Assembly (NCBI RefSeq): GCF_006345805.1
Contig: NW_021834809.1
Location: forward strand, 1 to 45,221
Length of the DNA: 45,221 bases
Direction: 5' to 3'
Source: Octopus sinensis
Lineage: Eukaryota
Made by a program: the position numbers and the translations under genes. How positions within the stretch are numbered: the stretch's first letter is position 1; every line of letters begins with the position of its first letter. This document shows, in pieces, positions 186 to 43,999 of the stretch. The notes beneath the pieces were generated by a model that saw only the letters and a list, made by a program, of their open reading frames with translations, was not told the DNA's origin and made no database searches.

Positions 186-881
186 CAGTGTGAGCACGTA
201 TGTGTTTTTTACATTTCTCGGATCCATGATATCAGTAAAACATGTTATCATAAACTCGGAAAAAAATAAGACCTTTTATCAGAAAGGGCAAGCGTAGAAG
301 AATGGATTAAAACGAAAGAAAGATATGAAAGTATATTCATATATATATATATATATATTCGCGATCACGTAAAATATATGTATATGTCATAGAGCGACAA
401 AACTTTGAAAACAATAGTGTTTAACCTTTTATTCCGTAAATAAATTTAAACGAGTGTATGCGTAATGGAAAAACAAAATATTGTTTACGATAAAAACGTT
501 GTCAGAGCAAAATCTTCGAATGCTGTTCGCTTGATTTGGCCTACTGTCACTCATTCTCATTCCGTATTTCGTTTTACTGTTCTTTCGCCAGATGAGACTC
601 GCCTTGCGTTTTATAATATATGTAACATTGACGTAAAACACTTAAGATACGTGGTAGCATGAAAGCTGGAGATGCGGTAGCAAAAGACAATGAGAAGATT
701 GTAATAAACGATTGTTGAAATAACCGCTTATTTCATTAGTCAATTAGTATTTGACACGTAATATCAAATATGCTCAACAACCCCAGTTTTTCTGTTATAT
801 CACACATGCATACAGACTGACTAACAGACACGCGTACATGCATACATATATAGATACAGACAGAAATACAGACAACACACG

Positions 882-1000
<119 letters not shown>

Positions 1001-1979
1001 AACTTTCTCTCATGACAGAATACTAATTAGTCATTATGATTTCAAAACTTTGAGAGCAGAAATTATTGCACATTAAATATAACTAACGTTCAGTGAACTA
1101 ACTTCATATCTTACGAAAATTACTTGTTTTCATAATTCAATGAACAACCATTTTACTCTTTGTGTCTTTGCTTTTCGAAAATGAAAATTATTAATAAAAA
1201 CATAGAAGTAGCTTCAAAAATACTTGCAGTAAAAACAATTATTGTTTGTGGAGCCAAATATCTCATACAAATGCTTCTGCTTTATACCTAAATGTCTCAA
1301 GTTTTCTATTCGTTTGTGTGAAAAGTGTATTTAACTTGTATATTATCTACTTGTCTCGTGTGATACTACCTCAATCGTTGCGTATGACATTATTTTTTCA
1401 GTGCTGCTGTAGATATATATATTAACACATATATGTGTGAGTGTACGTATATATGCGTATATCGTTGAATATATTTAAACAAACACTGATTTTTATGCTG
1501 CAGATGTATCTTCTGACTTCAGAGCTTCTACCCATATTTGGGTATAGGTTCTAAAATAAGGAAGTACTAGGTAGGAAGCGCAACAACATATATCATAATA
1601 TCATAACTTAGAATATATAATAAATATGCTTATAATCATATATATATACACTGAAGAAACTGGCCTTGGCAAATATATTTTGTTTGTTTGCTGAAAATAG
1701 TTAGAAACCGTCGGTCTGGGATATAGTTGAGATGGTAAATGTTTTTAATTTTGATTCCTTTCATGAATTTATCCCTTTTTGTGTTTCTAGCACAACGCTT
1801 CCTTTTTTGGAAGCCTCTTATTGTATTTCTATATGAATAATATATTGTCTAATGACTAATTCGTCTTTTGTGCTAGGCCGCTGGTAATAATAATTTATTA
1901 TTACCCTATTTTATTATGTTTATATATATTATATATATATATATATACATGTATATATATGAACATATATTTAGGACAC

Positions 1980-5979: not shown

Positions 5980-6283
5980 GTGGAGGCGCAATGGCCTAGT
6001 GGTTAGGGCAGCGGACTCGCGGTCGTAGGATCGCGGTTTCGATTCCCAGACCGGGCGTTGTGAGTGTTTATTGAGCGAAAACACATAGAGCTCCACGAGG
6101 CTCCGGCATGGGGTGGTGGCGATCTCTGCTGTACTCTTTCGCCACAACTTTCTCTCACTCTTTCTTCTGTTGGCCTGCTCGCTTAGCCAGCGGGATGGCG
6201 TCATTTGAAGGCTAAAACAATGCGAAGCGCATTGTGACCAGCAATGTGTAACAACATCTGATGGCCTGGTAATCACGGTGATA
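5980..6283 (+). mobile_element. tRNA-derived SINE, head 1 + tail B
   Basis: Head GGAGGCGCAATGGCCTAGTGGTTAGGGCAGCGG...GGTTTCGATTCCCAG (A and B boxes) is nearly identical to that at 15527, but the 3' part after ~6165 is unrelated (GGCCTGCTCGCTTAGCCAGCGGG...CATTGTGACCAGC). Confidence 0.88.
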
Positions 6284-10297: not shown

Positions 10298-10529
10298 AGG
10301 CGGCGAGATGGCAGAAACGTTAGCACGCCGGGCGAAATGCTTAGCGATATTTCGTCTGCCGTTACGTTCTGAGTTCAAATTCCGCCGAGGTCGACTTTGC
10401 CTTTCATCCTTTCGGGGTTGATTAAATAAGTACCAGTTACACACTGGAGTCGATATAATCGACTTAATCCGTTTGTCTGTCCTTGTTAGTCCCTTCTGTG
10501 TTTAGCCCCTTGTGGGCAATAAAGAAATA
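10298..10529 (+). mobile_element. tRNA-derived SINE family C, full length
   Basis: AGGCGGCGAGATGGCAGAAACGTTAGC...TTCTGAGTTCAAATTCCGCCGAGG...CTTTCATCCTTTCGGGG...TAAAGAAATA; colinear with the copies at 22346 and 43591-43999. Confidence 0.9.
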
Positions 10530-10871
10530 TGAAACACTTTCCCCTACTTTCAGTTATATCTTCCAATAAAATACAGTTGTGATGAAGATCTACTTAGAAA
10601 ACTCGTCACAGTTCTTATCCGTCTGGAAGCTTACATCAAACAAGATACCAAGTATCATTAACAGTCCCTCAGTTAATCGTCTCATGTGCTACCCGTATTT
10701 ACTTGCCCGCTAGATGCCTCCTAAGTTATCTTCATACATGCATCTCGTAATCGCTCCGTGTACGGTCCTTCATCTTCTGTTTCATTCTCCATTTATGAAA
10801 CACCGTAATGAGGATACTGGTTGCATACATCAATCCCAGCTTAAGTAGGGTCCTCAACACCTAGTAGTAAG

Positions 10872-15526: not shown

Positions 15527-15910
15527 GGAGGCGCAATGGCCCAGTGGTTAGGGCAGCGGACTCGCGGTCATAAGATCGCGGTTTCGATTCCCAGACCGGG
15601 CGTTGTGAGTGTTTATTGAGCGAAAACACCTAAAAGCTCCACGAGGCTCCGGCAGAGGATGGTGATGATCCCTGTTGTACTCTTTCACCACAACATTCTC
15701 TCACTCTTACTTCCTGTTTCTATTGTACCTGTATTTCAAGGGGTCGGCCTTGTCACTCTCTCTGTCACGCTGAATATCCCCGAGATCTACGTTAAGGGTG
15801 CACGTGTATGTGGAGTGCTCAGCCACTTATACGCTAATTTCACGAGCAGGCTGTTCCGTTGATTCGGATCAACCGGAACCGTCATCGTCGTAACCGACGG
15901 AGTGCTTCCA
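15527..15910 (+). mobile_element. tRNA-derived SINE, head 1 + tail A, with 11-bp TSD
   Basis: Full element flanked by the direct repeat TCAAAATAACA (15516-15526 and 15911-15921), as expected from target-primed reverse transcription. Confidence 0.93.
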
Positions 15911-16200
15911 TCAAAATAACACTTGAAGTTGCCAATACAGAAATAGCTGTCTGTTTTTCTATAGTATTTCTATCTTCGTCCGATCAGCTGTAACATGTTA
16001 AATGAGTTTACTTCTTTAAAAATACGAGAGAGCAGAAGTACGACTGGAATACATTGTGTTTTACTAGCTTGTTTCAACTAAATAATCTCTCACACATCCG
16101 TATTATTTGAAGCCACGTTAAAGTCATTAATATTTCTAGCGTTTTCATGCGAAAAACATTGTCAAAAATCTTCTGAAAATTATTCTACGCTTTAGATGAA

Positions 16201-16257
16201 GAAGTTATATTCACCAACACTCTGCAACGGAACATGCCTGGTGGTAAAGACGATGAT
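16201..16257 (+). mobile_element. 57-bp Helitron helicase fragment (PTLCNGT.LVVK motif)
   Basis: 49/57 identical to the reverse complement of 17913-17969, counted by eye. Confidence 0.75.
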
Positions 16258-17584: not shown

Positions 17585-18300
17585 TAAAAAAACCTCTTCG
17601 TAAACAATATTCTTTGTTTTCCCTTGTGGAACAAATGCAAATAGATTTTTTGAGAGAGTTTCCACTCTAGAGCAGCCAACATTTAATTGCTCGTAGAAGA
17701 AGCATGGCTCTTCCAAGTGAAGTTCTACTACAGACAGTGTTTGACCCTGGGATTTATTGGTAGAGGTTGCGAAGCTGATACGAATGGGAAATTGCACTCT
17801 TCTGAATGAAGAAGGTATTTCTGCTCCTCATGGTATGAGAGGAATTCTGGGTATGAAAATATCCTCTCCTTATCGTCAACCAGAGAGAATGGTGGCCTCA
17901 TTAACTTGTGGCATCATCTTCTTTACCACCAGGTGTGTCCCATTGCAGAGTGTTGGTGGATCTAAGTTCCTAATCAACATTACTGGAATTCCCGGTTTAA
18001 GTTCCAGTCTGTTGGGTGGTAGTCCTGCAGGCTCCAATGAATTGAGAAATTATGTTGGATGATTTAGCACCTCTTCTGGATCTGAGATTGTATCAACTGA
18101 TTTACAGATGTCAGGACTTCCAGAAATGAATGCAGCAGTTGCTCATTACTTTTACTTATAGTGCTGTCTCTTGGAGCCAGTATTGCTCTTTCATACATCC
18201 AAATGAGATTGTGACACTTTTTTGACCAATGGATGTATGAGACAATCAGTTTCTGAAAGCTTCTTCGCAAAGAGTTATCTTCTTTCTCCACGTTACACAG
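17585..18300 (-). pseudogene. Helitron RepHel PIF1-helicase C-terminal half, decayed
   Basis: Translates to YERAILAP...SVDTISDPEEVLNHPT*FLNSLEPAGLPPNRLELKPGIPVMLIRNLDPPTLCNGT...IPRIPLIP*...QFPIRISFATSTNKSQGQTL...VGCSRV...GKTKNIVY, covering PIF1 motifs IV-VI of Helitrons, with stops and frameshifts. Confidence 0.95.
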
Positions 18301-18469
18301 GAAATGGAGTTTTCTGCTCCTAGAGGGCCCGTTACTCAATATGTGAAGAAATTTGAGAGTTTAAAACCATCTCTGGAACATAAGTAATATATATACTCAG
18401 TTTAGAGAAAATCAGTTGCGAAATCCAGAATTTATGCGGGTTTACACAGAAGCACAACCTCACATATAT

Positions 18470-18567
18470 ACGTGTGTGTGTGTGTATGTATATATATATA
18501 CATATAGATATATAGATATATAGATAAATCTATAGATAGATAGATCGATAGATAGACAGACAGACAT

Positions 18568-18617
<50 letters not shown>

Positions 18618-18625
18618 GATAGAGA

Positions 18626-18702
<77 letters not shown>
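18470..18702. repeat. compound GT/ATAG/TA microsatellite
   Basis: Direct reading. Confidence 0.93.
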
Positions 18703-19997
18703 GTCTTGCTTCTCTTCTTGTTGCTCCATTTCCATGGTATCGATATATAGTGTTTCATTCATTTAAACCAGCTTATATTGCTGATTGCGTCTATTTCCAT
18801 CGTCTTCACCGGCCAGATGTGTTTCGTTAATCGTTGTTGATGTTCCATCATTAAATTTTATCCTTAACGTATTCCTTATTTGATCTATTAGAAGACCAAT
18901 TATTTATGTTTTAATTCTTTGATCTATTGAAAGAGCTATTATTAATTTTTTATTCTTTGCTAATTTATACTCGTGTTTCTCATTTATACTTTTAGAAAAT
19001 CTTATACTTTCATCTTCTACCGATAATTCTTTCTCGTTTTTCTTTTTCCGGATTTTGTTGGTCATCACTCTTAAGATATCCTAAGATTCGATTGTAGTGC
19101 AACTTTAAAATATTTTCCTTTTCTCAGACGTGTTGACCCTATTTTTTTTATTTTTTTTATTTTAGTCCCCAATGTTTTCTTAAAGGTAGTGTGCTGCTTA
19201 GTGTACATAACATATTGTCATTATTTCTGTTTTAAGTGTTATATTTCGATTTCTGCCAACGTTCCTTTTTGAGAATATAACACGTATTCTGTTATAAATT
19301 CTATTCCATAATGTTTATAATTTTCTTTACTGTTTATACGATTTTGTAACAATATTTCATTTTGGTGGATAATTTGTTGTCATAACATTTATATATAGAT
19401 GAGTGATGCATTCCTTTCAAATCCATTTAGGCCTATTCTCTTTCTTTTGTTCTTTCTTTCCTTGAGGAGTAAAAGTTAATTGCTTATTGAAGTTGTCAAA
19501 AATTTCCTTCAGATAACGGTGTATTCGTTAATGTTGATATCGAGTTATGTACATTATGGTTTTGGCATATTTTATATGCCAGATCCCGCAAACACGCTCT
19601 CATATTAACGTTGGGCTGAAAGACAGTTTTTTTTGTGTTTTTTACATTTGTGTTGTCTGTCATTTACTGGTGGAGAATGGAACTAATGTGAAGTTGATAT
19701 GAAACATTCCTCGAGTGTTAATTTACACGTAGCATTGAATCACTGGCGAATATGAACACGCGTATTACATTAATTATACAGAATAATGCTCAATAAATAT
19801 TGCAAGCATTCCTTATACAATTACCTATCAACGCTTTCTTCTTTGGATTAGATTCATTAACTATTCTTATTCCATAATCTACGGCGCTGTCAAGCAGCGC
19901 TCTCTTATGCTAATCGTACAAGATGTTCTCTTGTTAAACAACCCCAGTGATCAATTGTTGAGTATACTGTGTTGTATTCTTAAAGCAATCTTGTAAT

Positions 19998-19998
19998 T

Positions 19999-20029
<31 letters not shown>

Positions 20030-20034
20030 CCACC

Positions 20035-20106
<72 letters not shown>

Positions 20107-20135
20107 TCATCATCATCATCATCATCATCATCATC
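19998..20135. repeat. (CAT)n/(CAC)n trinucleotide tract
   Basis: Direct reading. Confidence 0.95.
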
Positions 20136-20861
20136 GGCATCACCATCATCCCTCATTGATGTTATTATCATTCAGTTTCTGAAAATGTACAGATGCAGAT
20201 GACAAAATGGAGTGTGGGCGAAAGTTATGGGAAATTTCCAACACTACGTTTGATATTTTATTATTTGTGATTGAACATCATTTCATGATCGACTTTTATC
20301 TTTACGAGGATTATGAAGTAAGTAGAAGAAATACCGCCTTTTTTGCTTTCTATCGCCGTTACTCTAACGTTCCAAAAGTGTTTGGCATATTGCATGGCGT
20401 ATTCTTCGAAATATCTTGGAATTCACTGGAAATAAAACTCTCAAGAGGGAAAATAAATTATGAAAATGGTAAACATAAATAAGAAGAACTACTTCAAGAT
20501 TGATATTATTGGATGCAAATTATTCCCAATGGTTTACAAAGAATAAATCATTTTACATTTACTACACCAGGAATATTTTTACATATGAGGCGTGAGTTGA
20601 TTCAAGATAAATAAAATAAATAATTAATGCGAAATAGAAACAATATATTCAAATTTATGTAAGTGGAAAAATATTCGATTAAAATTTGAAAACTTGATGC
20701 AGAATTGTTGTTAGTTTTCTTTTTCTTGGGTATATAATTGCTGACAAAAGAAAATTGGTTAATGGGGGTAGAGAGAAGGGAATAACAAGGCTGGATGAGA
20801 TTAGAATAGAATATATAGAAGATATGCGAGAGAAATCACGAGAGAAACACATGCATTTATG

Positions 20862-22345: not shown

Positions 22346-22534
22346 CATTTCGTCTACCGCTACGTTCTGAGTTCAAATTCCGCCGAGGTCGACTATGCCT
22401 TCCATCCTTTCGGGGTCGATTAAATAAGTACCAGTTACGCACTGGGGTCGATGTAATCGACTTAATCCGTTTGTCCGTCCTTGTTTGTCCCCTCTGTGTT
22501 TAGCCCCTTGTGGGTAGTAAAGAAATAGCTATTT
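22346..22534 (+). mobile_element. SINE family C, 5'-truncated
   Basis: Matches the 10298 copy from ATTTCGTCT onward and ends in the 14-bp palindrome GAAATAGCTATTTC. Confidence 0.9.
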
Positions 22535-23024
22535 CCCTCTCTTTCGACGCATCTTTCTCTATTCCTCCTACTTTCTCGCCCTCTCACTCAACATCTCTTC
22601 GCCTCAACTTTTCTCTCTCTTCCCCCCTCTCTGTTTTTTCTCCACCTGTCATTCGCTCATTCTGCCTATCCCACTCCAAAGGTAATGGTACCGGTTCCTT
22701 GGTGCACACGGGTATCTTACCAAATACTTAAGTCACTCCAAACCCAATCGTTTTACCTCCCCTTCTCACTCATATTAAGCCCAACCCTCAGTTTACACAC
22801 ACTCTACTATTCCTCGAGTGTGTGTATTCTACTATTCCTCGACTCACGGCTTTCTTCCAATATTGATGCTTAAGAGTCTGTTTTCTGGAAAATTGAAGCG
22901 GCTTACTCATTTTGCCCCAGCCTAGTTTGTCTCTTATACGCTCAAAGTGAAAGGCGATAAATTAATAAAATGGGGATCAGGTTTCGTATATATATGCATG
23001 TATGTATGTGTGTATATGTATGTA

Positions 23025-23621: not shown

Positions 23622-23745
23622 TTCACGTTCTGAGTGCAAATTCCGCCGATTATGATATTGCCCTTCATCTTTTTGGAGGTTGCCTTTCATCTTTTTGGAG
23701 TCGATAAGTACCAGTTAAATACTCGATGAAGTCGACTTACCCCAT
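23622..23745 (+). mobile_element. decayed SINE family C fragment with an internal ~22-nt duplication
   Basis: ACGTTCTGAGTGCAAATTCCGCCGA...TTGCC(C/T)TTCATCTTTTTGGAG (twice)...ATAAGTACCAGTTA. Confidence 0.7.
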
Positions 23746-23792
23746 TTTCTGAAACGGCTTTAATACCTTTAATAGAAAGGATTTTATTATTG

Positions 23793-23997
23793 TTGTTGTA
23801 TTTAGGAATGGTCATTTTGCCAGTTTTGCCAATAAAGACACAATCACAACATATTTGGTGTTAATTTGCTTCAGCTTTATTTATGTTTTACATTAATCTT
23901 AATCGTATTTCGGCCAGAGTTCTTTCGCTAAACTGGCAAAAATAACTATTCCTAAATACATCTGTTTCAACACACGATTTCACATCAAGAATCTTGC
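23793..23997 (+). mobile_element. Penelope-like pLTR fragment with inverted junction (same family as 37565-37830)
   Basis: 23793-23927 matches 37606-37740. 23928-23997 is an inverted copy of the adjacent part of the same element, and the arms 23795-23827 and 23927-23960 are complementary. Inverted truncated pLTRs are typical of PLEs. Confidence 0.7.
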
Positions 23998-24029
23998 AAA
24001 ACAGATATATAAACGTAATTTTATTATAA

Positions 24030-24052
24030 TTATTATCATTATTATTATTATT

Positions 24053-24141
<89 letters not shown>

Positions 24142-24142
24142 A

Positions 24143-24188
<46 letters not shown>
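24030..24188. repeat. (TAT)n-(CAT)n-(TAT)n trinucleotide tract
   Basis: Direct reading. Confidence 0.95.
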
Positions 24189-24189
<1 letters not shown>

Positions 24190-24223
24190 GGCAGTGAGCT
24201 GGCTTCTACGAGGGTTAGGCGGT

Positions 24224-24385
24224 ATTATTGCCTTTGCACAACTTCTAACGCTGGAGATGTACTACGGTGTCAGCAGTTCACTACCACTGAACTAAGGTAA
24301 CACCTCTTATTTTTTGAGCATCTTCCGGAGTATTCTAGTGGTTCCAAGCAGTACTGTTTTCTGCAAGTACTCCACCCGCTCTCTT
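24224..24385 (-). mobile_element. 3' end of a Dong/R4-clade non-LTR retrotransposon
   Basis: Minus frame ERVEYLQKTVLLGTTRILRKMLKK* matches the R4/Dong C-terminal LQK..LLGTARILRKVL motif; it is followed by a short 3' UTR ending in AATAAT. Confidence 0.8.
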
Positions 24386-24460
24386 AATTAACACCAAATA
24401 TATAGTGCGTGTGTATTTATTGGCAAAACTGGCAAAATGACCATTTCTATATACTACAAC
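24386..24460 (-). mobile_element. third fragment of the 37565-type pLTR family
   Basis: Reverse complement of GGAATGGTCATTTTGCCAGTTTTGCCAATAAA...TATATTTGGTGTTAA. Confidence 0.75.
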
Positions 24461-24504
24461 TATAATAATATCCTTTCTATTAATGGTACACGGCCAGCAG
24501 TTTC

Positions 24505-24510
<6 letters not shown>

Positions 24511-24540
<30 letters not shown>

Positions 24541-24583
24541 CTACCACCACCACCACCACCACCATCGTCATCATCATCATCAT

Positions 24584-24633
<50 letters not shown>

Positions 24634-24761
24634 CCACCACACCACCATCATCATCATCATCATCATCATCACCACCACCGCCATCATCATCATCACCACC
24701 ATCGTCATCGTCATCATCATCATCACCATCATCACTACCACCACCACCACCATCATCATCG

Positions 24762-24832
<71 letters not shown>

Positions 24833-24852
24833 GTCGTCGTCGTCGTCGTCGT
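24511..24852. repeat. (CAT/CAC/CGT)n trinucleotide mosaic
   Basis: Direct reading; poly-H/I/S/M ORF artefacts. Confidence 0.95.
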
Positions 24853-25340
24853 CACTGATATCAGGGGTATTATTGCTTGGGCCTCAGATGCCTGTGCTAT
24901 CAGAATATTAGTAGTTGTAATATTTGTAGTATTAGCAGCTGCAGCATATTATTATTATTATTATTATTTTTATTATTTTCAGCATCACCGCCACTACTAC
25001 TGATATTGTCATTATTACTATTTGCATTCATTATTAAATGGTTTTGGTGAACGTTCTTTATTTTCAACTTTTGGCTTGTACTTGAGATAAACATAAATGT
25101 GTGGTGGCTGAAAGAAATGGTGGTGGAGGAGCAGCAGCTTCCCCACCCCCATTCAATTCTACAGGTCTATAAATAGATTCGGTATTTGGTGGGGAGTTCA
25201 GCCATAGAGACAAAAGAATCTTCGCAACCTTTGGGTCAAATGCGTTTACTACTGCCAGTGACCACTGGGAGCGCTGAACTTGCCCTTGAGAAGAAGTAAT
25301 TCAACCTGTTCTATTTGTCATTACTGGTAGAGAAAACAAT

Positions 25341-28720: not shown

Positions 28721-29177
28721 TCTAGCATAGAATATTTTGCCATTGTTCGTCTACAATCTTTCTTCTTACATTTCGGGTCGGCCTTCAGAGATATTATCCA
28801 CGCAATCTTCTCTTACTCCCCATCTCTCTCTCCCACACTTTCTGTCTCAGCCCCTTTCTTTCCAGCATTCTATATTTTCATTATTCTGATTATGCATTAG
28901 AATCCTAAATTCTATTCTCTTTGGTTTTATCAACATTTCTGTAGTTTCGTCGCCTACCAAATATTCATTTTCTTCACCGTTGCGAATGTCCAGCTCATAT
29001 ATTAACATCTAGTTATATATCGATAAAACACATATTTTTGTTTCTTGATGTTTAGTTTTAATCACATTTATGAATTTTTCTCTCGTTGTATTTTCGAGTA
29101 CCAAAGTTGTTATTTCGTAAGGGTTTTCTTTCATTATAAAGCACTGCTCTCCTCCGTGTGCAGGATAGATATAATTT

Positions 29178-29330
<153 letters not shown>

Positions 29331-29532
29331 ACTTCTTGTCTATCTATCTTTCTATACATCTCTCTCCTCCTCTGTCTCTCTCATGCATTTTTCATTTATG
29401 GAATAACTGAATGCATGCCAACTTTTGTTAACAGTGTATATATATTTATGTGTATATACATACATATACATACATATATATATATATATGTGTGTGTGTC
29501 TCTGTGCGTTTGTGTGTGTGTGTATTTATATA

Positions 29533-30260
29533 CACGATGTGTAGTCAAAAGATATCGCACCATTTTGATTTCAAAGTATTCGCCTTGGGACTCTACGCAC
29601 TTCCCCCAGTGTTCCTGTCACTGCTGGAAACATACCTGTAAATCCCTGTTTGGAATGCTGTAGAGCTGGGCCGTCGAATTTAGCTTAATGCCCTATGTTG
29701 ACTCACATATTGTCCTTTGAGTTTTTCTTTGTTCTTGAGCTTTGGGAATAGCCAAAAGTCATACGGAGCCTTGTCTGGGTAGTAGAAAAGCCTGACAAAC
29801 AGGTGGTGTATTTAGCTTGACGAGGATCGCTTAAACGACGTGGGCGCAATGAATTGGCTGAACTGACCAATGGCTGATTCCAACTTCGAAGACAATCTTA
29901 TCAATAGTCACATGATAGTATTCATAGATTATTTCTCGAGCCATTTCAACTATTTCGTCGTTTCTACTAGTTGATAATCTGTCATAACTTTGTTCACTGT
30001 TCACTGAGGCGCGGTCAGCTTTGAACCTGTTGTACCACTGCTTTATTTGGTACTTTTCCCAGAGCATCATATCCAAAAGCCTTCTGAATTTTCTCGGTAG
30101 CCTGGGCTTGCGTATCACTAAGTCTTTCAAAGAATTCGATGCAGTATCTTTGCTCTATGCGCTCGGTGACTCAAGGATGCATGCTCAGGAAGAACGCATG
30201 ATCAGAAAGGACGCGACCACATAATACACATGCGAATTTTGCTCACGGTTTAAATATTTT
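29533..30260 (-). mobile_element. decayed mariner transposon (N-terminal HTH region plus 3' terminal segment)
   Basis: Frameshifted translation RIEQRYCIEFFERL...EKIQKAFGYDALG..QIKQWYNRFKADRASVNSE...RLSTSRNDEIVE...TIDKIVFEVGIS is a mariner transposase HTH. The left end TA|CACGATGTGTAGTCAAAAG resembles a mariner TIR; the right end is not resolved. Confidence 0.8.
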
Positions 30261-31400: not shown

Positions 31401-31618
31401 CAATTCTATATTTAAGCGATGAAGAATTATATACATTTTTTACATTTCGTTTCGGCTGATATATTCTCCAGTCATCATCAGGTGTCTTGGGAAAATTTCG
31501 AATCTGGGTTCTCATTTCTAAGGTTTTTTTGTCGTTGTTGTTGTTGTTGTTATTGTTATTATTACTAATATTATTATTATTATCATTATTATTATTATTA
31601 TTATTATTGTTATTATTA

Positions 31619-31780: not shown

Positions 31781-31927
31781 GGGTATATGGAGTAGGAATG
31801 AGAACCCAGGTTCGAAATTTCCCAAAGTCACCTGAACAAGGCTGGAGGGTATATCAGCCGAAACGTTGTGTTAACAACAAACAAAATGAGGACAAATATC
31901 CGTCAAATGTAAATAATGTAAATAATG
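31781..31927 (+). mobile_element. inverted second copy of the same composite element (head truncated to ~15 nt)
   Basis: GGGTATATGGAGTAG joined through TAG microhomology to GAATGAGAACCCAGGTTCGAAATTTCCC...AAATGTAAATAATGTA. Confidence 0.8.
31827..31872 (+). ncRNA. minimal type-I hammerhead-like motif with a mutated core (CUGAACA)
   Basis: GUCAC CUGAACA A GGCUG gaggguauau CAGCC GAAA CG UU/GUGUU. Perfect 5-bp stem II, palindromic AACGUU stem III, and stem I that pairs fully if the GACAC of the other copy is used. Confidence 0.6.
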
Positions 31928-32360: not shown

Positions 32361-32750
32361 TGGTGGAAGCACTCAGTCGGTTACGACGATGAGGGTTCCG
32401 GTTGATCCGAATCAACGGAACAGCCTGCTCGTGAAATTAACGAGTAAGTGGCTGAGCACTCTACAGGCACGTGCACCCTTAACGTAGTTCTCGGGGATAT
32501 TCAGCGTGACACAGAGAGTGACAAGGCCGGCCCTTTGAAATACAGGTACAACAGAAACAGGAAGTAAGAGAGAGAGAGAGTTGTGGTGAAAGAGTACAGC
32601 AGGGATCACCACCATCCTCTGCCGGAGCCTCGTGGAGCTTTTTAGGTGTTTTCGCTCAATAAACACTCACAACACCCGGTCTGGGAATCGAAATCGCGAT
32701 CCTGTGACCGCGAGTCCGCTGCCCTAATCACTGGGCCATTGGGCCTCCAC
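32361..32750 (-). mobile_element. SINE head 1 + tail A, full length
   Basis: Reverse complement of the 15527 copy; probable TSD ATTCAATTATC (32350-32360) / ATTCACTTATC (32752-32762). Confidence 0.92.
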
Positions 32751-37564: not shown

Positions 37565-37830
37565 GTGCAAGAATTTTTATGTGAAGTCGTGTGTTGAAAC
37601 AGATATTGTTATATTTCGGAATGGTCATATTGCCAGTTTAGCCAATAAAAACCCACGCACTATATATTTGGTGTTATTTTGCTTCAGTGTAATTTATTTT
37701 TTACATTAATCTTAATCTTATTTCTGCCAGAGTTCTTTCGTCACACTCCTGTGACCGCATCAGTGGTCCTTTGTTTTCTTCATTCTTATTCGTGTCTCTC
37801 CTAACTAACCGTCAGCCATTTTGTATTTCT
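37565..37830 (-). mobile_element. Penelope-like pLTR-type short element of a second family, carrying a hammerhead-like motif
   Basis: Homologous to 23793-23997 and 24386-24460; its minus-strand 3' end runs into the TA tract at ~37523-37560. Confidence 0.65.
37727..37766 (-). ncRNA. minimal type-I hammerhead-like motif (C at position 9)
   Basis: Minus strand CCA CUGAUGC G GUCAC aggagu GUGAC GAAA G aa CUC/UGG. Stem I 3 bp, perfect 5-bp stem II, CUC cleavage triplet. Confidence 0.55.
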
Positions 37831-38186
37831 ATGTATGTTTTCATTTGCGCATGTTTTATCTCTATGCGTCTGTTTATGTTTATTTAGTGTGTGTTGTGGG
37901 GGGATGCCTGTAATTTTGTATCTTCTGTTTATATACGTTCATGTAATTTGTATTTTGTTTTGTTGTTGTTGTTTTTGTTTATTCTTATTTTGTTCATGTG
38001 TTTTTACATCCACCCATTATTATCATTACATATGCTTGTATTTATGTATAACAACAATACTAGTAATAATAATAATAAATCGAATCGAAAAAAAAATATA
38101 TATACATAGATATATACATACACAAACACACACACACACATACACACACACACACACACACACCACACAACACACCCACACACATA

Positions 38187-38227
<41 letters not shown>

Positions 38228-38247
38228 TATATATACATGTATATGTA

Positions 38248-38811
38248 GATGATGACTTCTCAATTTTTCTCGATAGTAGTTCTTTTCCAGAAAGTTCCTA
38301 TTCGCACACCACAAATGTGGATCAAAATGTTTGTCACAGCATCGTTTTCAGCAGCAAGTTCAACACATTCCTGGTTTAGTTTACGATGCAATACCACGCT
38401 GCTTCATCGCCTGATGGGATATCGATTGAGATTCCGAGAAGGTAGACATCGGTACTTAAAGCAACCAATGATTGCCTTAAAATATTTCATGTTCGAGCAC
38501 TTCACGAAGGATCTTTTGAATGATAGCCCAGTAAACTGAACCAGGAATGTGTTGAACTTTCTGAGAACTATGCTGTGACAAACATTTTGATCCATATTTT
38601 TGGTGTGCGAATAGGAAATTTCTGGAAAAGAACTAATCGAGAAAAATTGACAAGTGATCATTTGCATATATATGGCATTCAAAATATTGTTTGTGAAGTA
38701 CTCGAACATGAAATTTTTTAGGCAATCATTTGTTGCTTTAGGTACAGATGTCTACCGTCTCGGAGAGCAACAATCGATATCCCATCAGGCGATGAAGCAG
38801 CGTGGTATTGC
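38248..38811. repeat. interleaved double inverted repeat A-B-A'-B'
   Basis: A (38248-38384) is complementary to A' (38531-38661); B (38388-38522) is complementary to B' (38676-38811); roughly 88-90% identity by eye. Confidence 0.92.
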
Positions 38812-39354
38812 TTAGGCCCCTTTCATCGCAACACCAGAGCTTCCTGTGGCCAACCACTAATGTAGGCGACAAAACTCTGACTCAAACGTTGAACTCTGTC
38901 GACAGACATTTTCCTACCAAATTTGCTGCCAAATTTGTCCTTTCTCTTTCTAGCTCAGAGAGTACCTAGAATTTTCTAGCAAAATATGTCAAGAACACAG
39001 TGAGACTAGGATTTAAAGTATAAAATTATGAAACTAAATAATGAATGACATTTAATGAGTTACTCTTCACTTTTTAGCAATAGGTCTATTATCAAACGAT
39101 AATAATATTGATTTCTTGCCATTACAAAATGCCATGAATATGTAATGAAGGGATATAATATTTTGCATAATTTGCTGCTAATTATTTCCTTCACCCTAGA
39201 GCAATGAAACAAAAGGTCAATACACATTGTATACAAATGTAGAATCATGAGAAACGGATTAAAATATCTTAATGTTATAGAATTTATATCAATTTGCCTT
39301 TCTTTGTGGCCAGAATAGAATTAAAATATTGTTAACGAAATACAGATGATATTG

Positions 39355-39900
39355 TTGTTGATGGTGATGATGATGATGATGGTCGCGGTGACAATGGGGA
39401 TGAAAGGCCAGTGCGCAATAATGATGACGGTGGTGCTGTATGTGGTGAGGATGTTTATGATAATGATGATGACGACGACGACGGCGATGATGATGAAGAT
39501 GATGGTCGTTATGATGATAACTAGGATGTCTTTGACAAAGAGCAACATGATGACGATGATGACGACGACGATGCTGCTGCTGCTGATGATGATGATGACG
39601 ACGACGACGACGACGATGACGACGATGATGATGATGATGATGATGATTACGACGCTTGTGTCTGCGACGATTAACGCTAGCGACAATAACGATGATGATG
39701 GTGATATTAATGGTGGTGGTGGTGGTGGTGGTGGTGGTGCGGCAGCCTCGGTAATGGTAGCAATGCTGTTGGCGGCGAAGGTGGTGATTGTGGTGATGGT
39801 GGGATGATAATATTGGCGATGATGACGACAACGACGACGCTGATGATGATGATATGCCATGATGATGACGGTGGCGAATACAATGATAATGATAAAAATG
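39355..39900. repeat. cryptic trinucleotide mosaic (GAT/GAC/GGT/GCT)
   Basis: Direct reading. Confidence 0.9.
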
Positions 39901-40237
39901 CTGACTGCAGAACTAATTAAGAAGAACAGGATGTCAACTTTGATGACCCTAATTATAACGAGGTTCAAGGGAATACTGGTCAATGTGATTTACAACCAAG
40001 GGCATTCTAATCGTGACCATTACGCCCATCCTTTTTTTTTTTTGCAAAGATCTAAGAAATACATTAACCAATATTAACAACATTCCGTGAAAGAGCTCCC
40101 TGGGATTTGAATGAGGTTTTGATAGGATTTTTGGCAGAGCAAATCACTGCAAGGGATACACCAATTGTAGCAGAATTCACGGGTACGATGCATTAGAAAG
40201 GATGAGAGTTACGGTCTATGCGATGTTGTTAATGCTG

Positions 40238-40356
40238 CTTATGATGATGATGATGATGATGAGGAGGAGGAGGAGAAGGGGGTGAATTATGATGGTGATC
40301 AAGATGATGATGAGGACCGTGGTGGTGGTGATGACGACGATGATGATGATGATGAT

Positions 40357-40400
<44 letters not shown>

Positions 40401-40665
40401 CCTGATGATGATGGGGATGAGAGTGGTGGTGTTAGAACGTGTGGAGTGGTGGTGGGTGGTGGTGGTGGTGGTGGTGGTGGTACTTTAGAGGTGGTGCTTG
40501 TACTGTCGGTAGTATGGTAGTGGCGCTTGCGATGATGGTGGTATTGGTGATAGTTGCAGTGGTTTTTGGCGGCGGTAGGAGGGGTGGCGGCGGCGGCGGC
40601 GGCGGTGATGGTGATGGTGGTGGTGGTGGTGGTGGTGGTGTTTGTTTTGCTGATGGTGATTGCTA
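40238..40665. repeat. cryptic trinucleotide mosaic (GAT/GAG/GGT/GGC)
   Basis: Direct reading. Confidence 0.9.
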
Positions 40666-41349
40666 GTAATTGCGTATATTTCGGTTGTGTAAGCACAGCC
40701 GACGCTAGAACACGGAACTGCTAAAGATTTTTCAACCTCATTTGTTTGTAGAGTACGATTCGGAACGCCTCTAGCAAGATTTTGAATTGAAAAAGAAAAA
40801 ACAAAGAAAAAAAGAAAATAAAAGAAAACAACAACAAAATGCAAAATGTGTTAACTAACGAATTATAGGCGATGCAGAGTTCAGCATTTTATCAATTAGC
40901 GTCGTGTATCGATAATTAGTCGAAATGTGTTGCCGCTAATGAAAAGAAGGATATAAAGAAAGAAAAGTATGATGCAGAATGTAAACTGGGATATACACAA
41001 TTCGTCACTTAATTAACATAAGACCTGGAGGCAAATCACAGTGGACCATTGCTCCTCCTATATTCAAGAATGCTGAGTGAGTTTGCTGATGCTGCTGTTG
41101 CTGCTGTCACTACTACTACAACTACTACTACTACTACTACAACTACTACTACTACTACTGCTGCTGCTGCTGTTGCTGTTGAGCGAACGGTCTTCGTCTC
41201 AGAGCTGCAAGATGGGAGAAGTCCGAAACGTGGTCCTTTGCTACTCGTAAGACCCGCAGAAGAGAAAGCAGGTCAACCTCCGACACCGAGAGCATCGACG
41301 GATGGATGAATGCGCATCCAGGCTCAGCGGTTGCGTAGGAAGTCGGAGA

Positions 41350-41523
41350 CAAGAATCAGGAAGAAAGAGTGAGAGAAAGTTGGGGTCGCCACTACCCCCT
41401 GCCGGAGCCTCGTGGAGATTTAGGTGTTTTCGCTCAATAAACACACACAACGCCCGGGAATCGAAACCGCGATCCTCCGACCAGAAGTCAACTGCCCTAA
41501 CCACTGGGCCATTGTGCCTCCAC
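41350..41523 (-). mobile_element. SINE head 1, 3'-truncated
   Basis: Reverse complement of the 5980/15527 head through GAGTGAGAGAAAGTTG. Confidence 0.85.
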
Positions 41524-41837
41524 TTGCTGCTGCTGCTGCTGCTGCTGTTGCTATTGTTCCTGCTGCCCTTGATTTGAGCAACCGATGTTAGAGAATCGTT
41601 AAAACGTCGGGCAAAATGCTTAGCACGAATTGGTTGAACTTACGTCTTGACAAACATTTTGATCTATGCTTCTGTTGTCTGTATATGTACCCATACATAC
41701 ATACATCCATGGTGGTGGCTGCCCTCTCTTTATCGAGTATGGCCATTGCACGAAGTTTAATCAATGTTGTTATCGTGCAATGCCTGTGCCAAAATATTTT
41801 TTTTTAAGTGAGGAAGGGCTGTGCACTGAGTCAATCC

Positions 41838-42025: not shown

Positions 42026-42049
42026 ACATACCCACACCTTATATGTATA

Positions 42050-42685
42050 TGAGGCGAAGTCAAAAATTATCCATACTTTCGCCATAACATATCTTTATGT
42101 TCACAATGCCTTCTACGCATGTGTGTTTATAGCTAGTAATATTGCAGTCACGTGATCGGAATTTTAAAATGATGGTACCATTTTTCTTTCTAACGTTACA
42201 ATGTAAGCATGACCGCTCAACAAGCAACGTACACCACAAAAGAACGAAGAGTAAGTAATCTGATTTCTCTAGTCGGAAGGTGTGTCAGGTGCTGAAGTTC
42301 ATCGGAGGCTTTTAGCACAATGCGGGGACAGTGCAGTACCGCGTAAATGTGTACATCAGTGGATCGAGAAGTTTAAAATGGCCAGTCAAGCATGACGCAG
42401 AAAGAGGTTGCAGGACGCGCGTCAACCTCCACCGATAAGAAGATTCATCCAGATCCAGAAATGGTAATAGTGAACCGGTTCACCGTTACATCACTCGGAT
42501 CATTGCTCTTTGTTTTTTTTTTTTGGGGGGGGGGGTTGTGCACATTGCTATTGGTGCCATCAGGCCCAAACATCGACCACTTCACCACAATAGTACCAAC
42601 GATACGCATGCATGCGCAGATGGCTGTGTGACAATAATACAGATATATTATTGGGAAAGTGCAGTTAATTTTTGACTTTCCCTCG
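42050..42685 (+). mobile_element. internally deleted non-autonomous mariner with both TIRs and TA TSDs (636 bp)
   Basis: Left end TA|TGAGGCGAAGTCAAAAATTATCCATACTTTC; right end, reverse-complemented, TA|CGAGGGAAAGTCAAAAATTAACTGCACTTTC. Internal remnant SEGVSGAEVHRRLLAQCGDSAVPRKCVHQWIEKFK is a mariner HTH; the DD34D catalytic region is absent. Confidence 0.9.
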
Positions 42686-42966
42686 TATATGTATATATAC
42701 CTATGTATTACCTCATATGAAGACAAACAAGTTTGTTTATGAAGTGTTGAAATCTATTGTAGAACAAGTAAAAAGGTAATTTTTTTCAACACGTAAATAC
42801 TGAGCAATATATATAAAGAATAAAATCATTTTAAGAGCAGAAACGTTTGCTGGCAACCGGCAAATTTTTTCTGCTTTTAAAAGGATTTTATCCTTTATAT
42901 ATACTGTTTCAGTATTTACGTATTGAAGAACATTCTATATTTGTTTTAATACACACACACACGATA

Positions 42967-43590: not shown

Positions 43591-43999
43591 TATTTCTTTA
43601 TTGCCTACAAGGGGCTAAACATAGAGGGGACAAACAAGGACAGCCAAAGGGATGAATTCGATTACATCGACCCCAGTGCGTAGCTGGTACTTAATTTATC
43701 AACGCCAAAATGAAAAATGGCAAAGTCGACCTCGGTGGAATTTGAAATCAGAAAGTAACGGCAGACGAAATACCTATCTCTTTAATGCCCACAAGGGGCT
43801 ACACCCAGAGGGGACAAACAAGGACAGACAAACGGATTAAGTCGATTAAATCAATCCCAGGTCGTAACTGGTACTTATTTAATCGACTCCGAAGGGATGA
43901 AAGGCAAAGTTGACCTCGGCGGAATTTGAACGTACCGGCAGACGAAATAGCGCTAAGCATTTCGCCCGGCGTGCTAACGATTCTGCCAGCTGGTCGCCT
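43591..43999 (-). mobile_element. SINE family C tandem dimer (one head, two bodies)
   Basis: A full copy at 43999-43775 is followed directly by a headless copy at 43774-43591; the junction reads AAAGAGATA|GGTATTTCGTCTGCC on the minus strand. Confidence 0.88.

What the first reader, a model, noticed from the sequence alone, without database searches (positions are those of the whole stretch)
38248..38811. Interleaved A-B-A'-B' inverted repeat: circularly permuted inverted copy and bistable dsRNA switch
Seen: two ~135-bp inverted-repeat pairs cross instead of nesting, with spacers of only 3, 8 and ~14 nt. A simple fold-back would give B-A-A'-B'. A'B' reads as one continuous sequence (open frame KLNQECVELSENYAVTNILIHIFGVRIGNFWKRTNREKLTSDHLHIYGIQNIVCEVLEHEIF), whereas the left half is its reverse complement circularly permuted and opened in the TATATATG linker, next to a (TA)n tract. 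Inference: an inverted re-insertion of a ~280-bp circular intermediate (eccDNA or rolling-circle product), or a double template switch. If transcribed, A:A' and B:B' helices of this length cannot both form fully with such short loops, giving two mutually exclusive long hairpins. These would be potential ADAR or endo-siRNA substrates in a lineage known for extensive A-to-I editing.
Basis: partly seen in the sequence, partly recalled or inferred. Interest (0 to 1): 0.72.

Follow-up and report, generated by a model that had tools for sequence, protein, structure and literature searches.

The report
Interleaved inverted repeat: a template-switch scar
The two crossing inverted repeats are real, but one already described replication error explains them: about 290 bases copied backwards off the opposite strand, then a return. 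That makes this most likely an old mutational scar in non-coding DNA, not a re-inserted DNA circle or a shown RNA switch.

Summary
A (38236-38384) pairs with A' (38531-38674), and B (38388-38522) pairs with B' (38676-38811). Both pairs are inverted and interleaved, about 92% identical, with connectors GAT, ATAGCCCA and G.

The arms differ by 23 substitutions and 6 indels. The structure is therefore old and not an assembly artefact.

No circular permutation is needed. The order X Y' mid' X' Y is what one switch-and-return template switch produces. In the four-point model this is type "3-1-4-2"; at larger scale it is the structural variant called dupINVdup.

On this reading the ancestral sequence was one ~293-bp unit, A+TGGGCTAT+B'. 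Its whole reverse complement (B-ATAGCCCA-A') replaced the 8-nt middle.

Longer open frames cross the other junctions too, so that argument fails.

No protein, RNA-family or transposon hallmark was found, and no relatives turned up in any collection I could reach.

The two long hairpins are mutually exclusive but not equal in energy: A:A' wins by 24 kcal/mol (+ strand) and 11 kcal/mol (- strand). Transcription, ADAR editing and siRNA production could not be tested.

Rivals that remain are a self-nested unknown mobile element, capture of a sister-chromatid fragment at a break, and a re-inserted circle. Interest is low to moderate: a clean, unusually large example of a known kind of mutation.

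The parts
38100..38235 (.). (CA)n then (TA)n microsatellite that abuts the left end of A. In the model this is where the backwards copy stopped (switch point 3).
   Evidence: Sequence read; repeat families D1-D3 and I7-I20.
38236..38384 (+). A = X, the left part of the presumed ancestral unit, in its original orientation (fragment L->1).
   Evidence: Pairs with A': 133/144 identical.
38385..38387 (+). Junction 1 filler GAT, between the end of A and the start of the inverted copy. It matches neither possible template.
   Evidence: Alignment ends; sequence.
38388..38522 (+). B = reverse complement of B' (first part of the inverted fragment 2->3). The first 41 nt are identical to the end of B'.
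   Evidence: 122/134 identical; I3. The 41-nt identical run is not significant (p=0.19).
38523..38530 (+). ATAGCCCA = inverted spacer (mid'). It occurs once only. Its forward form TGGGCTAT is missing between A and B', as the 3-1-4-2 model expects.
38531..38674 (+). A' = reverse complement of A (last part of the inverted fragment 2->3).
   Evidence: I1, I5 and I6.
38675..38675 (+). Junction 2 filler G, between the inverted copy and the resumed forward copy.
38676..38811 (+). B' = Y, the right part of the presumed ancestral unit, in its original orientation (fragment 4->R).
41623..41686 (-). Possible third, much older partial relative of the middle of A (17-mer GATCAAAATGTTTGTCA plus AAGTTCAAC). 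Weak; it does not reach any junction.
   Evidence: nhmmer 14.4 bits, E 3e-4; 0 of 300 third-order Markov simulations reach that score; local alignment score 24.5 against a shuffle maximum of 21.

Best explanation
The locus once held a single non-coding sequence of about 293 bp: A + TGGGCTAT + B'. During replication the growing strand copied up to the end of A (point 1, 38384). It then jumped to the opposite strand at the far end of B' (point 2, 38811) and copied backwards through B', the 8-nt middle and A. It stopped at the edge of the (TA)n tract (point 3, 38236), jumped back to the original template at the start of B' (point 4, 38676) and carried on.

The 8-nt middle was thus replaced by the reverse complement of the whole unit, giving A-GAT-[B-ATAGCCCA-A']-G-B'. 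The apparent circular permutation follows automatically because the inverted fragment overlaps both the sequence before point 1 and the sequence after point 4.

Shown: the block order, orientations, boundaries and ~8% divergence. Inferred: the replicative route, the direction, and that the (TA)n tract acted as the stalling point.

I see no evidence of a function. If the region is transcribed, the RNA would fold into the A:A' hairpin (about 144 bp) with B in the loop.
For: - Topology and boundaries.
- Rebuilding A + rc(A+mid+B') + B' gives 578 nt against 576 observed, with 548/576 matches. The central block matches rc(outer unit) at 263/287.
[quoted passage not shown] It made up 1% of their human-chimp events.
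- A resolved human dupINVdup has the same point order: forward to 18,074,005; inverted 18,532,312->17,793,009; forward from 18,248,955 (PMC6286558). Such variants are attributed to FoSTeS/MMBIR.
- The forward 8-nt middle is absent from the outer copy and is present once, inverted, in the centre. The model predicts this; a nested insertion does not.
- Only four free break points and two jumps are needed, all local.
- Point 3 lies at the edge of a (TA)n tract. Such tracts are known fork barriers (my own knowledge).
- A/A' and B/B' have equal divergence (92.4% and 91.0%), which fits a single event.
- No transposon hallmarks, coding signal or RNA family.
Against: - No pre-event allele or orthologous locus could be examined, so the ancestral state is inferred only.
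- Neither junction shows microhomology. Both carry short fillers (GAT, G), which suits end joining at least as well as MMBIR. With ~4% change per arm since the event, single bases at junctions are not reliable either way.
- The inverted fragment (~293 nt) is much longer than the tens of bp typical of catalogued short template switches, and far shorter than typical dupINVdup variants.
- A weak third relative at 41623-41686 hints that the unit may belong to a dispersed family.
- The window holds several other local inverted pairs, so two repeat copies lying head-to-head is common here.
Confidence: 0.5

Rival explanations
1. Break-and-capture route to the same product. A double-strand break in the 8-nt middle of the unit was repaired by end joining that captured a ~293-bp linear fragment of the same locus, from the sister chromatid or homologue, in inverted orientation.
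For: This gives the identical block order. Both junctions carry 1-3-nt fillers and no microhomology, which is an end-joining signature. The 8-nt forward middle is lost, as expected at a processed break.
Against: It needs three breaks: two on the donor and one on the recipient. The donor fragment must also cover exactly the region around the recipient break. A one-step replicative switch is simpler. The classical staggered-break inversion is physically unlikely here, because the excised piece would be held together by only 8 bp (inference from the coordinates).
Confidence: 0.14
2. Self-nested mobile element. B-ATAGCCCA-A' (38388-38674) is a ~287-bp non-autonomous element that inserted, in opposite orientation, into the middle of another copy of itself (A...B').
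For: The topology is equally compatible. Both copies would be full length with the same ends. There is a possible third partial relative at 41623-41686. Head-to-head repeat copies are common in this window. The element end ...CATATATATG and the (TA)n next to the host copy could be a microsatellite-like tail.
Against: No target-site duplication around either copy. No terminal inverted repeats, poly(A) or tRNA head. The host copy lacks the 8-nt middle it should carry split around the insert: it has GAT...G instead of TGGGCTAT. No other full copy is in 45 kb, whereas the window's real SINE occurs 4 times. No match was found in any collection searched.
Confidence: 0.13
3. A ~281-bp circle (eccDNA/microDNA or a rolling-circle product) of A'-G-B' was closed with ATC, re-opened at the TATATATG linker and re-inserted upside-down 8 nt to the left of its source. 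Equivalently, three successive template switches went once round the unit.
For: The left half is an exact circular permutation of the reverse complement of the right half. The opening point and the insertion point are both TA-rich. (TA)n is self-complementary, so it could prime an inverted switch. The 8-nt spacer begins with ATA, as if it continued the (TA)n tract.
Against: It needs one more break or switch than the 3-1-4-2 event. It also needs two coincidences: re-integration within 8 nt of the source, and the copy ending 1-2 nt from where it began. The open-frame argument that A'B' is the original fails. No rolling-circle or other coding signal was found.
Confidence: 0.07
4. An ordinary orientation change inside a ~285-bp tandem satellite, so that both the AB and BA junctions pre-exist.
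For: None directly.
Against: There is no direct repeat of the unit anywhere in the window. Each half is exactly one unit long, to within 1-3 nt, which random array fragments would not be. The flanks are microsatellite and unique sequence.
Confidence: 0.03
5. Assembly artefact, such as a chimeric or palindromic read.
For: Inverted duplications are a known long-read artefact (my own knowledge).
Against: The arms differ by 23 substitutions and 6 indel events. Artefacts give identical arms and a simple fold-back order (B A A' B'), not a crossing one.
Confidence: 0.03

Closest known systems
Template-switch mutation of type '3-1-4-2' in the four-point model (Loytynoja & Goldman 2017, PMC5453318)
   Same: The output is L->1, then the reverse complement of 2->3, then 4->R, with point order 3<1<4<2. 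This yields two inverted repeats that cross, separated by an inverted spacer. The 1->4 fragment (here 8 nt) is replaced.
   Different: Catalogued events have 2->3 fragments of tens of bp; here the fragment is ~293 nt. The ancestral allele is not observed. The junctions carry 3-nt and 1-nt fillers.
dupINVdup complex structural variant (Brand 2015, cited in PMC5338099; PMC6286558 case P4; gnomAD-SV preprint 10.1101/578674)
   Same: An inversion flanked on both sides by inverted duplications, with two novel junctions and the same order of break points. It is attributed to FoSTeS/MMBIR.
   Different: Human cases are kb to hundreds of kb with a sizeable inverted middle. Here the duplications are 149 and 136 bp and the purely inverted middle is only 8 bp. 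The case series in PMC6286558 reports microhomology of at least 3 bp at every junction; none is seen here.
DUP-TRP/INV-DUP and ODIRA inverted triplications (PMC11293582, PMC10766183; abstracts seen)
   Same: Forward-inverted-forward copies made by two template switches at a replication fork.
   Different: In those, the return point lies before the departure point, so a segment is triplicated. Here nothing is triplicated. They also depend on pre-existing inverted repeats, and none is evident here.
Inversions with inverted duplications at both breakpoints from staggered breaks (Drosophila, Ranz et al. 2007; my own knowledge, not checked here)
   Same: The same X Y' mid' X' Y product.
   Different: Here the excised duplex would be held together by only 8 bp, which makes this route implausible.
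microDNA / eccDNA re-integration
   Same: The size range (200-400 bp) fits, and a circular permutation is what a re-opened circle would give.
   Different: No evidence requires a circle, and re-integration 8 nt from the source is unexplained.

Membership tests
3-1-4-2 template-switch mutation (four-point model) | The derived sequence equals L->1, plus the reverse complement of 2->3, plus 4->R, on one reference sequence. | tested here: met
   The reconstruction gives 578 nt against 576 observed, with 548/576 matches. The central block matches rc(outer unit) at 263/287.
3-1-4-2 template-switch mutation (four-point model) | Point order 3<1<4<2: the inverted fragment overlaps both flanks, giving two crossing inverted repeats and an inverted spacer present once. 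| tested here: met
   Coordinates. The spacer ATAGCCCA occurs only in the centre. Definition taken from PMC5453318.
3-1-4-2 template-switch mutation (four-point model) | The ancestral (pre-event) allele is seen in a sister lineage or a second haplotype. | not testable with these tools
   No genome of this organism or its relatives is in the collections.
3-1-4-2 template-switch mutation (four-point model) | Short range, with a copied fragment of tens of bp. | tested here: inconclusive
   The fragment is ~293 nt. All four points lie within 576 nt, so the event is local, but the fragment is longer than those catalogued.
dupINVdup complex SV | An inverted segment flanked on both sides by duplicated sequence in inverted orientation, with two novel junctions. 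| tested here: met
   compare case P4 in PMC6286558.
dupINVdup complex SV | Microhomology or templated insertions at the junctions (replicative signature). | tested here: not met
   Junction fillers GAT and G with no shared bases. About 8% later divergence weakens this test.
Transposable element, self-nested insertion | Target-site duplication flanking the insert and the host copy. | tested here: not met
   Flanks are GAT / G around the insert and (TA)n / TTAGGCC around the host.
Transposable element, self-nested insertion | Structural hallmarks: terminal inverted repeats, poly(A) tail, tRNA-like head, or a coding region. | tested here: not met
   The ends GCAATACC... and ...CATATATATG are not inverted copies of each other.
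Transposable element, self-nested insertion | Many dispersed copies with the same termini. | tested here: inconclusive
   Only one weak 64-80-nt relative in the window.
Tc1/mariner transposase remnant (my early guess from an 'SPD' motif) | Detectable similarity to the DDE transposase C-terminus. | tested here: not met
   No Pfam hit. tblastn with Mos1 and Hsmar1 sequences written from memory gives only E>5 in this region. Full HMMER against 1.84 billion proteins returns one spurious repeat-protein hit.
Tandem satellite with internal inversion | Head-to-tail copies of the unit. | tested here: not met
   No direct repeat of the unit in the window. Genome-wide copy number was not testable.
Bistable RNA switch | Two mutually exclusive folds of similar free energy. 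| tested here: not met
   -265.4 against -241.5 kcal/mol on the + strand; -240.4 against -229.2 on the - strand. The minimum-energy fold uses A:A' on both strands.
ADAR / endo-siRNA hairpin locus | Transcription of the locus, with A-to-G clusters or 21-24-nt reads. | not testable with these tools
   No expression data are available, and the organism was not identified.

The most novel reading that the evidence does not exclude
The structure is a germline-fixed re-insertion of a ~281-bp extrachromosomal circle (microDNA) beside its own source. Alternatively, whatever its origin, it is transcribed, and the order of transcription decides which of two exclusive ~140-bp hairpins forms, feeding ADAR or small-RNA pathways.
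Probability: 0.07. Interest if true: 0.6.

Novelty: new member of a known kind. Interest (0 to 1): 0.22.

Why it matters
If the reading is right, this is a clean natural example of the rarest observed class of single template-switch events (3-1-4-2). Its size, ~290 nt, sits between the short mutation clusters studied in primates and the kb-Mb dupINVdup variants of human genetics. That supports the view that one mechanism spans all of these scales.

It also carries a practical lesson. Crossing inverted repeats that look circularly permuted need no circular intermediate. Open reading frames in AT-rich DNA cannot be used to decide which junction is ancestral.

As a by-product, such events create long hairpin-forming loci from scratch. 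These are raw material for small-RNA or editing substrates, but nothing here shows that this locus is used that way.

Tried and rejected
- **Tc1/mariner remnant.** I noticed 'QYHAASSPD...' in one frame and suspected a transposase remnant.
- **Relatives elsewhere.** Exact-pattern scans of metagenome, prokaryote-genome and viral collections with conserved 23-25-mers found nothing. A homologue search with the 101-aa central ORF found nothing. Exact look-ups of three window ORFs were not on record. Family size, orthologues and independent assemblies could therefore not be examined.
- **RNA families and tRNA.** Only low-complexity microRNA look-alikes on the (TA)n tract.
- **Single inversions or fold-backs.** Starting from a tandem duplication or a palindrome, enumerating the possibilities never gives A B A' B'.
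- **Staggered-break inversion.** Rejected because only 8 bp would hold the excised piece together.
- **The 41-nt perfectly identical stretch (38388-38428 = 38771-38811).** Not significant (p=0.19).
- **Organism.** Not identified. I ran no further search on it.

Full report

Yes. Three methods agree: the repeat finder, a self-BLAST of 38200-38950 against the window and gapped local alignment.
- A (38236-38384, 149 nt) is the reverse complement of A' (38531-38674, 144 nt): 133/144 identical, 3 indel events.
- B (38388-38522, 135 nt) is the reverse complement of B' (38676-38811, 136 nt): 122/134 identical, 3 single-base indels.

The pairs cross (A B A' B'). BLAST E-values are 1e-44 and 1e-76. As RNA, the 591-nt stretch folds 21 (+) and 16 (-) standard deviations better than dinucleotide shuffles.

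The arms differ by 23 substitutions and 6 indel events. Assembly artefacts give identical arms in a simple fold-back order, so this is an old, real feature.

**2. What is the sequence?**

Nothing recognisable.
- Six-frame and frameshift-corrected translations have no Pfam match.
- A word-based search of 5.8 billion proteins found nothing.
- A full HMMER search of 1.84 billion representatives returned one borderline hit (E 3.4e-4). It is a 939-aa protein built of a short repeated motif, matched in six stretches. I regard it as spurious.
- My early impression of a Tc1/mariner C-terminus was not borne out by tblastn with Mos1 and Hsmar1.
- Rfam and ARAGORN find nothing apart from low-complexity hits on the (TA)n tract.
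- Exact-pattern scans of the metagenome, prokaryotic-genome and viral collections were empty.
- The window's ORFs are not on record in the assembly index.

The window is AT-rich (36% G+C) and full of microsatellites. It carries at least four copies of a tRNA-derived SINE, so it is eukaryotic.

**3. Which junction is ancestral?**

This argument fails. A 96-aa ORF (38249-38539, +) crosses A|B and runs on through the centre. A 101-aa ORF (38404-38709, -) crosses both the centre and A'|B'. None of these frames has a relative. Open frames of this length are common in this window.

The structure is also symmetric: each half is the inverted circular permutation of the other.

**4. A simpler reading.**

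Write X = A, Y = B' and mid = TGGGCTAT. The observed order is then X Y' mid' X' Y. This is the product of replacing mid by the reverse complement of the whole of X-mid-Y.
- Rebuilding A + rc(A+mid+B') + B' gives 578 nt against the observed 576, with 548/576 identical.
- The central block B-ATAGCCCA-A' matches rc(A+mid+B') at 263/287.

The four-point model of Loytynoja & Goldman (PMC5453318) describes any switch-and-return event as L->1, the reverse complement of 2->3, then 4->R. [quoted passage not shown] At larger scale the same point order defines the dupINVdup class of complex structural variants. Case P4 in PMC6286558 reads forward to 18,074,005, inverted from 18,532,312 to 17,793,009, then forward from 18,248,955. 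See also PMC5338099 and the gnomAD-SV preprint. These variants are attributed to FoSTeS/MMBIR.

Here the points are 3 = 38236, 1 = 38384, 4 = 38676 and 2 = 38811.

**5. Why I prefer this to a circle.**

The 3-1-4-2 event needs two jumps and four free points, all within 576 nt, and no coincidences. The circle model needs excision at 38531 and 38811, closure with three extra bases, re-opening at 38675, and re-integration 8 nt from the source. Written as template switching, the circle model needs three jumps, with the last copied base landing 1-2 nt from the first.

The 3-1-4-2 reading also explains two details.
- The 8-nt spacer exists only once, inverted, in the centre.
- The backwards copy ends exactly where a (TA)n tract begins. 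Such tracts are known to impede forks (my own knowledge; this role is inferred here).

The spacer begins with ATA, as if it continued the (TA)n tract, and (TA)n is self-complementary, so it could prime an inverted switch. Three bases do not carry much weight.

**6. Rivals that give the same product.**

*(a) End-joining capture.* A ~293-bp fragment from the sister chromatid is captured, inverted, at a break in the 8-nt middle. The junctions have short fillers and no microhomology, which suits this route. But it needs more breaks. After ~4% change per arm, single junction bases are unreliable.

*(b) Self-nested mobile element.* An unknown ~287-bp element inserted into its own copy.
- Against: no target-site duplication and no terminal hallmarks. 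The host copy lacks the middle it should carry (GAT...G instead of TGGGCTAT). There is no second full copy in 45 kb, whereas the window's real SINE occurs four times.
- For: a weak third relative of the middle of A lies at 41623-41686 (nhmmer 14.4 bits, E 3e-4; 0 of 300 Markov simulations reach that score). Several other local inverted pairs occur in the window. Head-to-head repeats are therefore common here, and copy number within the window is a weak test.

*(c) Classical staggered-break inversion.* This is implausible because the excised duplex would be held together by only 8 bp.

*(d) Satellite inversion.* There is no direct repeat of the unit, and each half is exactly one unit long.

**7. 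The RNA claims.**

The two helices form a pseudoknot topology. Helices of ~135-149 bp with connectors of 3, 8 and 1 nt cannot co-exist for more than a few base pairs (established geometry of H-type pseudoknots). 'Mutually exclusive' is therefore right.

'Bistable' is not. The state with A:A' formed is -265.4 kcal/mol against -241.5 for B:B' on the + strand, and -240.4 against -229.2 on the - strand. The minimum-energy fold uses A:A' on both strands.
- On a + strand transcript, A:A' is also the first pair completed.
- On a - strand transcript, B':B would be completed first and could be kinetically trapped. That is a one-way choice, not a switch.

Either hairpin would be a plausible substrate for dsRNA-binding enzymes. 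B:B' holds a 41-bp perfect run, and A:A' has perfect runs of up to about 25 bp. Nothing available shows that the region is transcribed.

**8. Verdict.**

The finding is real. Its most likely origin is a known type of mutation at an unusual size. It is best filed as a new member of a known kind. I put about 0.5 on the replicative 3-1-4-2 event and about 0.64 on the event-level statement that one inverted copy of the whole unit replaced its 8-nt middle, by replication or by capture. The remainder is split among a self-nested element, a circle, a satellite and an artefact. The functional reading is untested and not favoured.

Noticed in passing
window 6029-6049 (+), 15574-15594 (+), 32681-32701 (-), 41454-41474 (-); tRNA-like head at 41446-41515 (-): Four copies of a tRNA-derived SINE head (B-box-like GATCGCGGTTTCGATTCCC). 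None is expected by chance. Rfam's tRNA model scores 19.2 bits (below threshold) on one of them. The 282-nt pair 15632-15913 / 32361-32642 (93% identical) looks like the SINE body that follows two of the heads.
   Followed up: partly
window 29570-30046 (-) and 42285-42377 (+): Weak mariner-like remnants. Pfam found nothing at E<=0.1, so this is only a hint.
   Followed up: partly
window 31448-31520 / 31793-31865; 16195-16257 / 17913-17975; 42040-42158 / 42574-42695; 23744-23866 / 24386-24511 (third copy at 37606-37679): Other local inverted-repeat pairs, 72-85% identical. Three have no further copy in the window, and one flanks an (ATT)n microsatellite. They could be MITE-like elements or older inverted duplications. 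This suggests local inverted copying is frequent in this genome.
   Followed up: partly
window 38388-38428 and 38771-38811: A 41-nt stretch is perfectly identical between B and B', while the rest of the arms are ~88% identical. A permutation test gives p=0.19, so it needs no special explanation.
   Followed up: yes
window 41623-41686 (-): A marginally significant partial relative of the middle of arm A, lying just upstream of a (CAG)n tract and a SINE head. It may be an older relic of the same sequence family.
   Followed up: partly
window 19950-20160, 23976-24916, 39289-39983, 40222-40700: Long trinucleotide low-complexity blocks, (CAT/CAC/ATT)n and their complements. They produce long spurious ORFs (His-, Ile- and Ser-rich) and many low-identity long-range 'inverted repeats'.
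   Followed up: no
window 850-1056, 18443-18650, 29165-29358: (GATA)n/(GACA)n tetranucleotide arrays in both orientations. (TA)n and (CA)n tracts are also very frequent throughout the window.
   Followed up: no
window 43591-43772 / 43775-43949; related copies at 10348-10534 and 22347-22535: A ~180-nt dispersed repeat, present as an adjacent tandem pair (80% identical) and as two further inverted copies elsewhere in the window.
   Followed up: no
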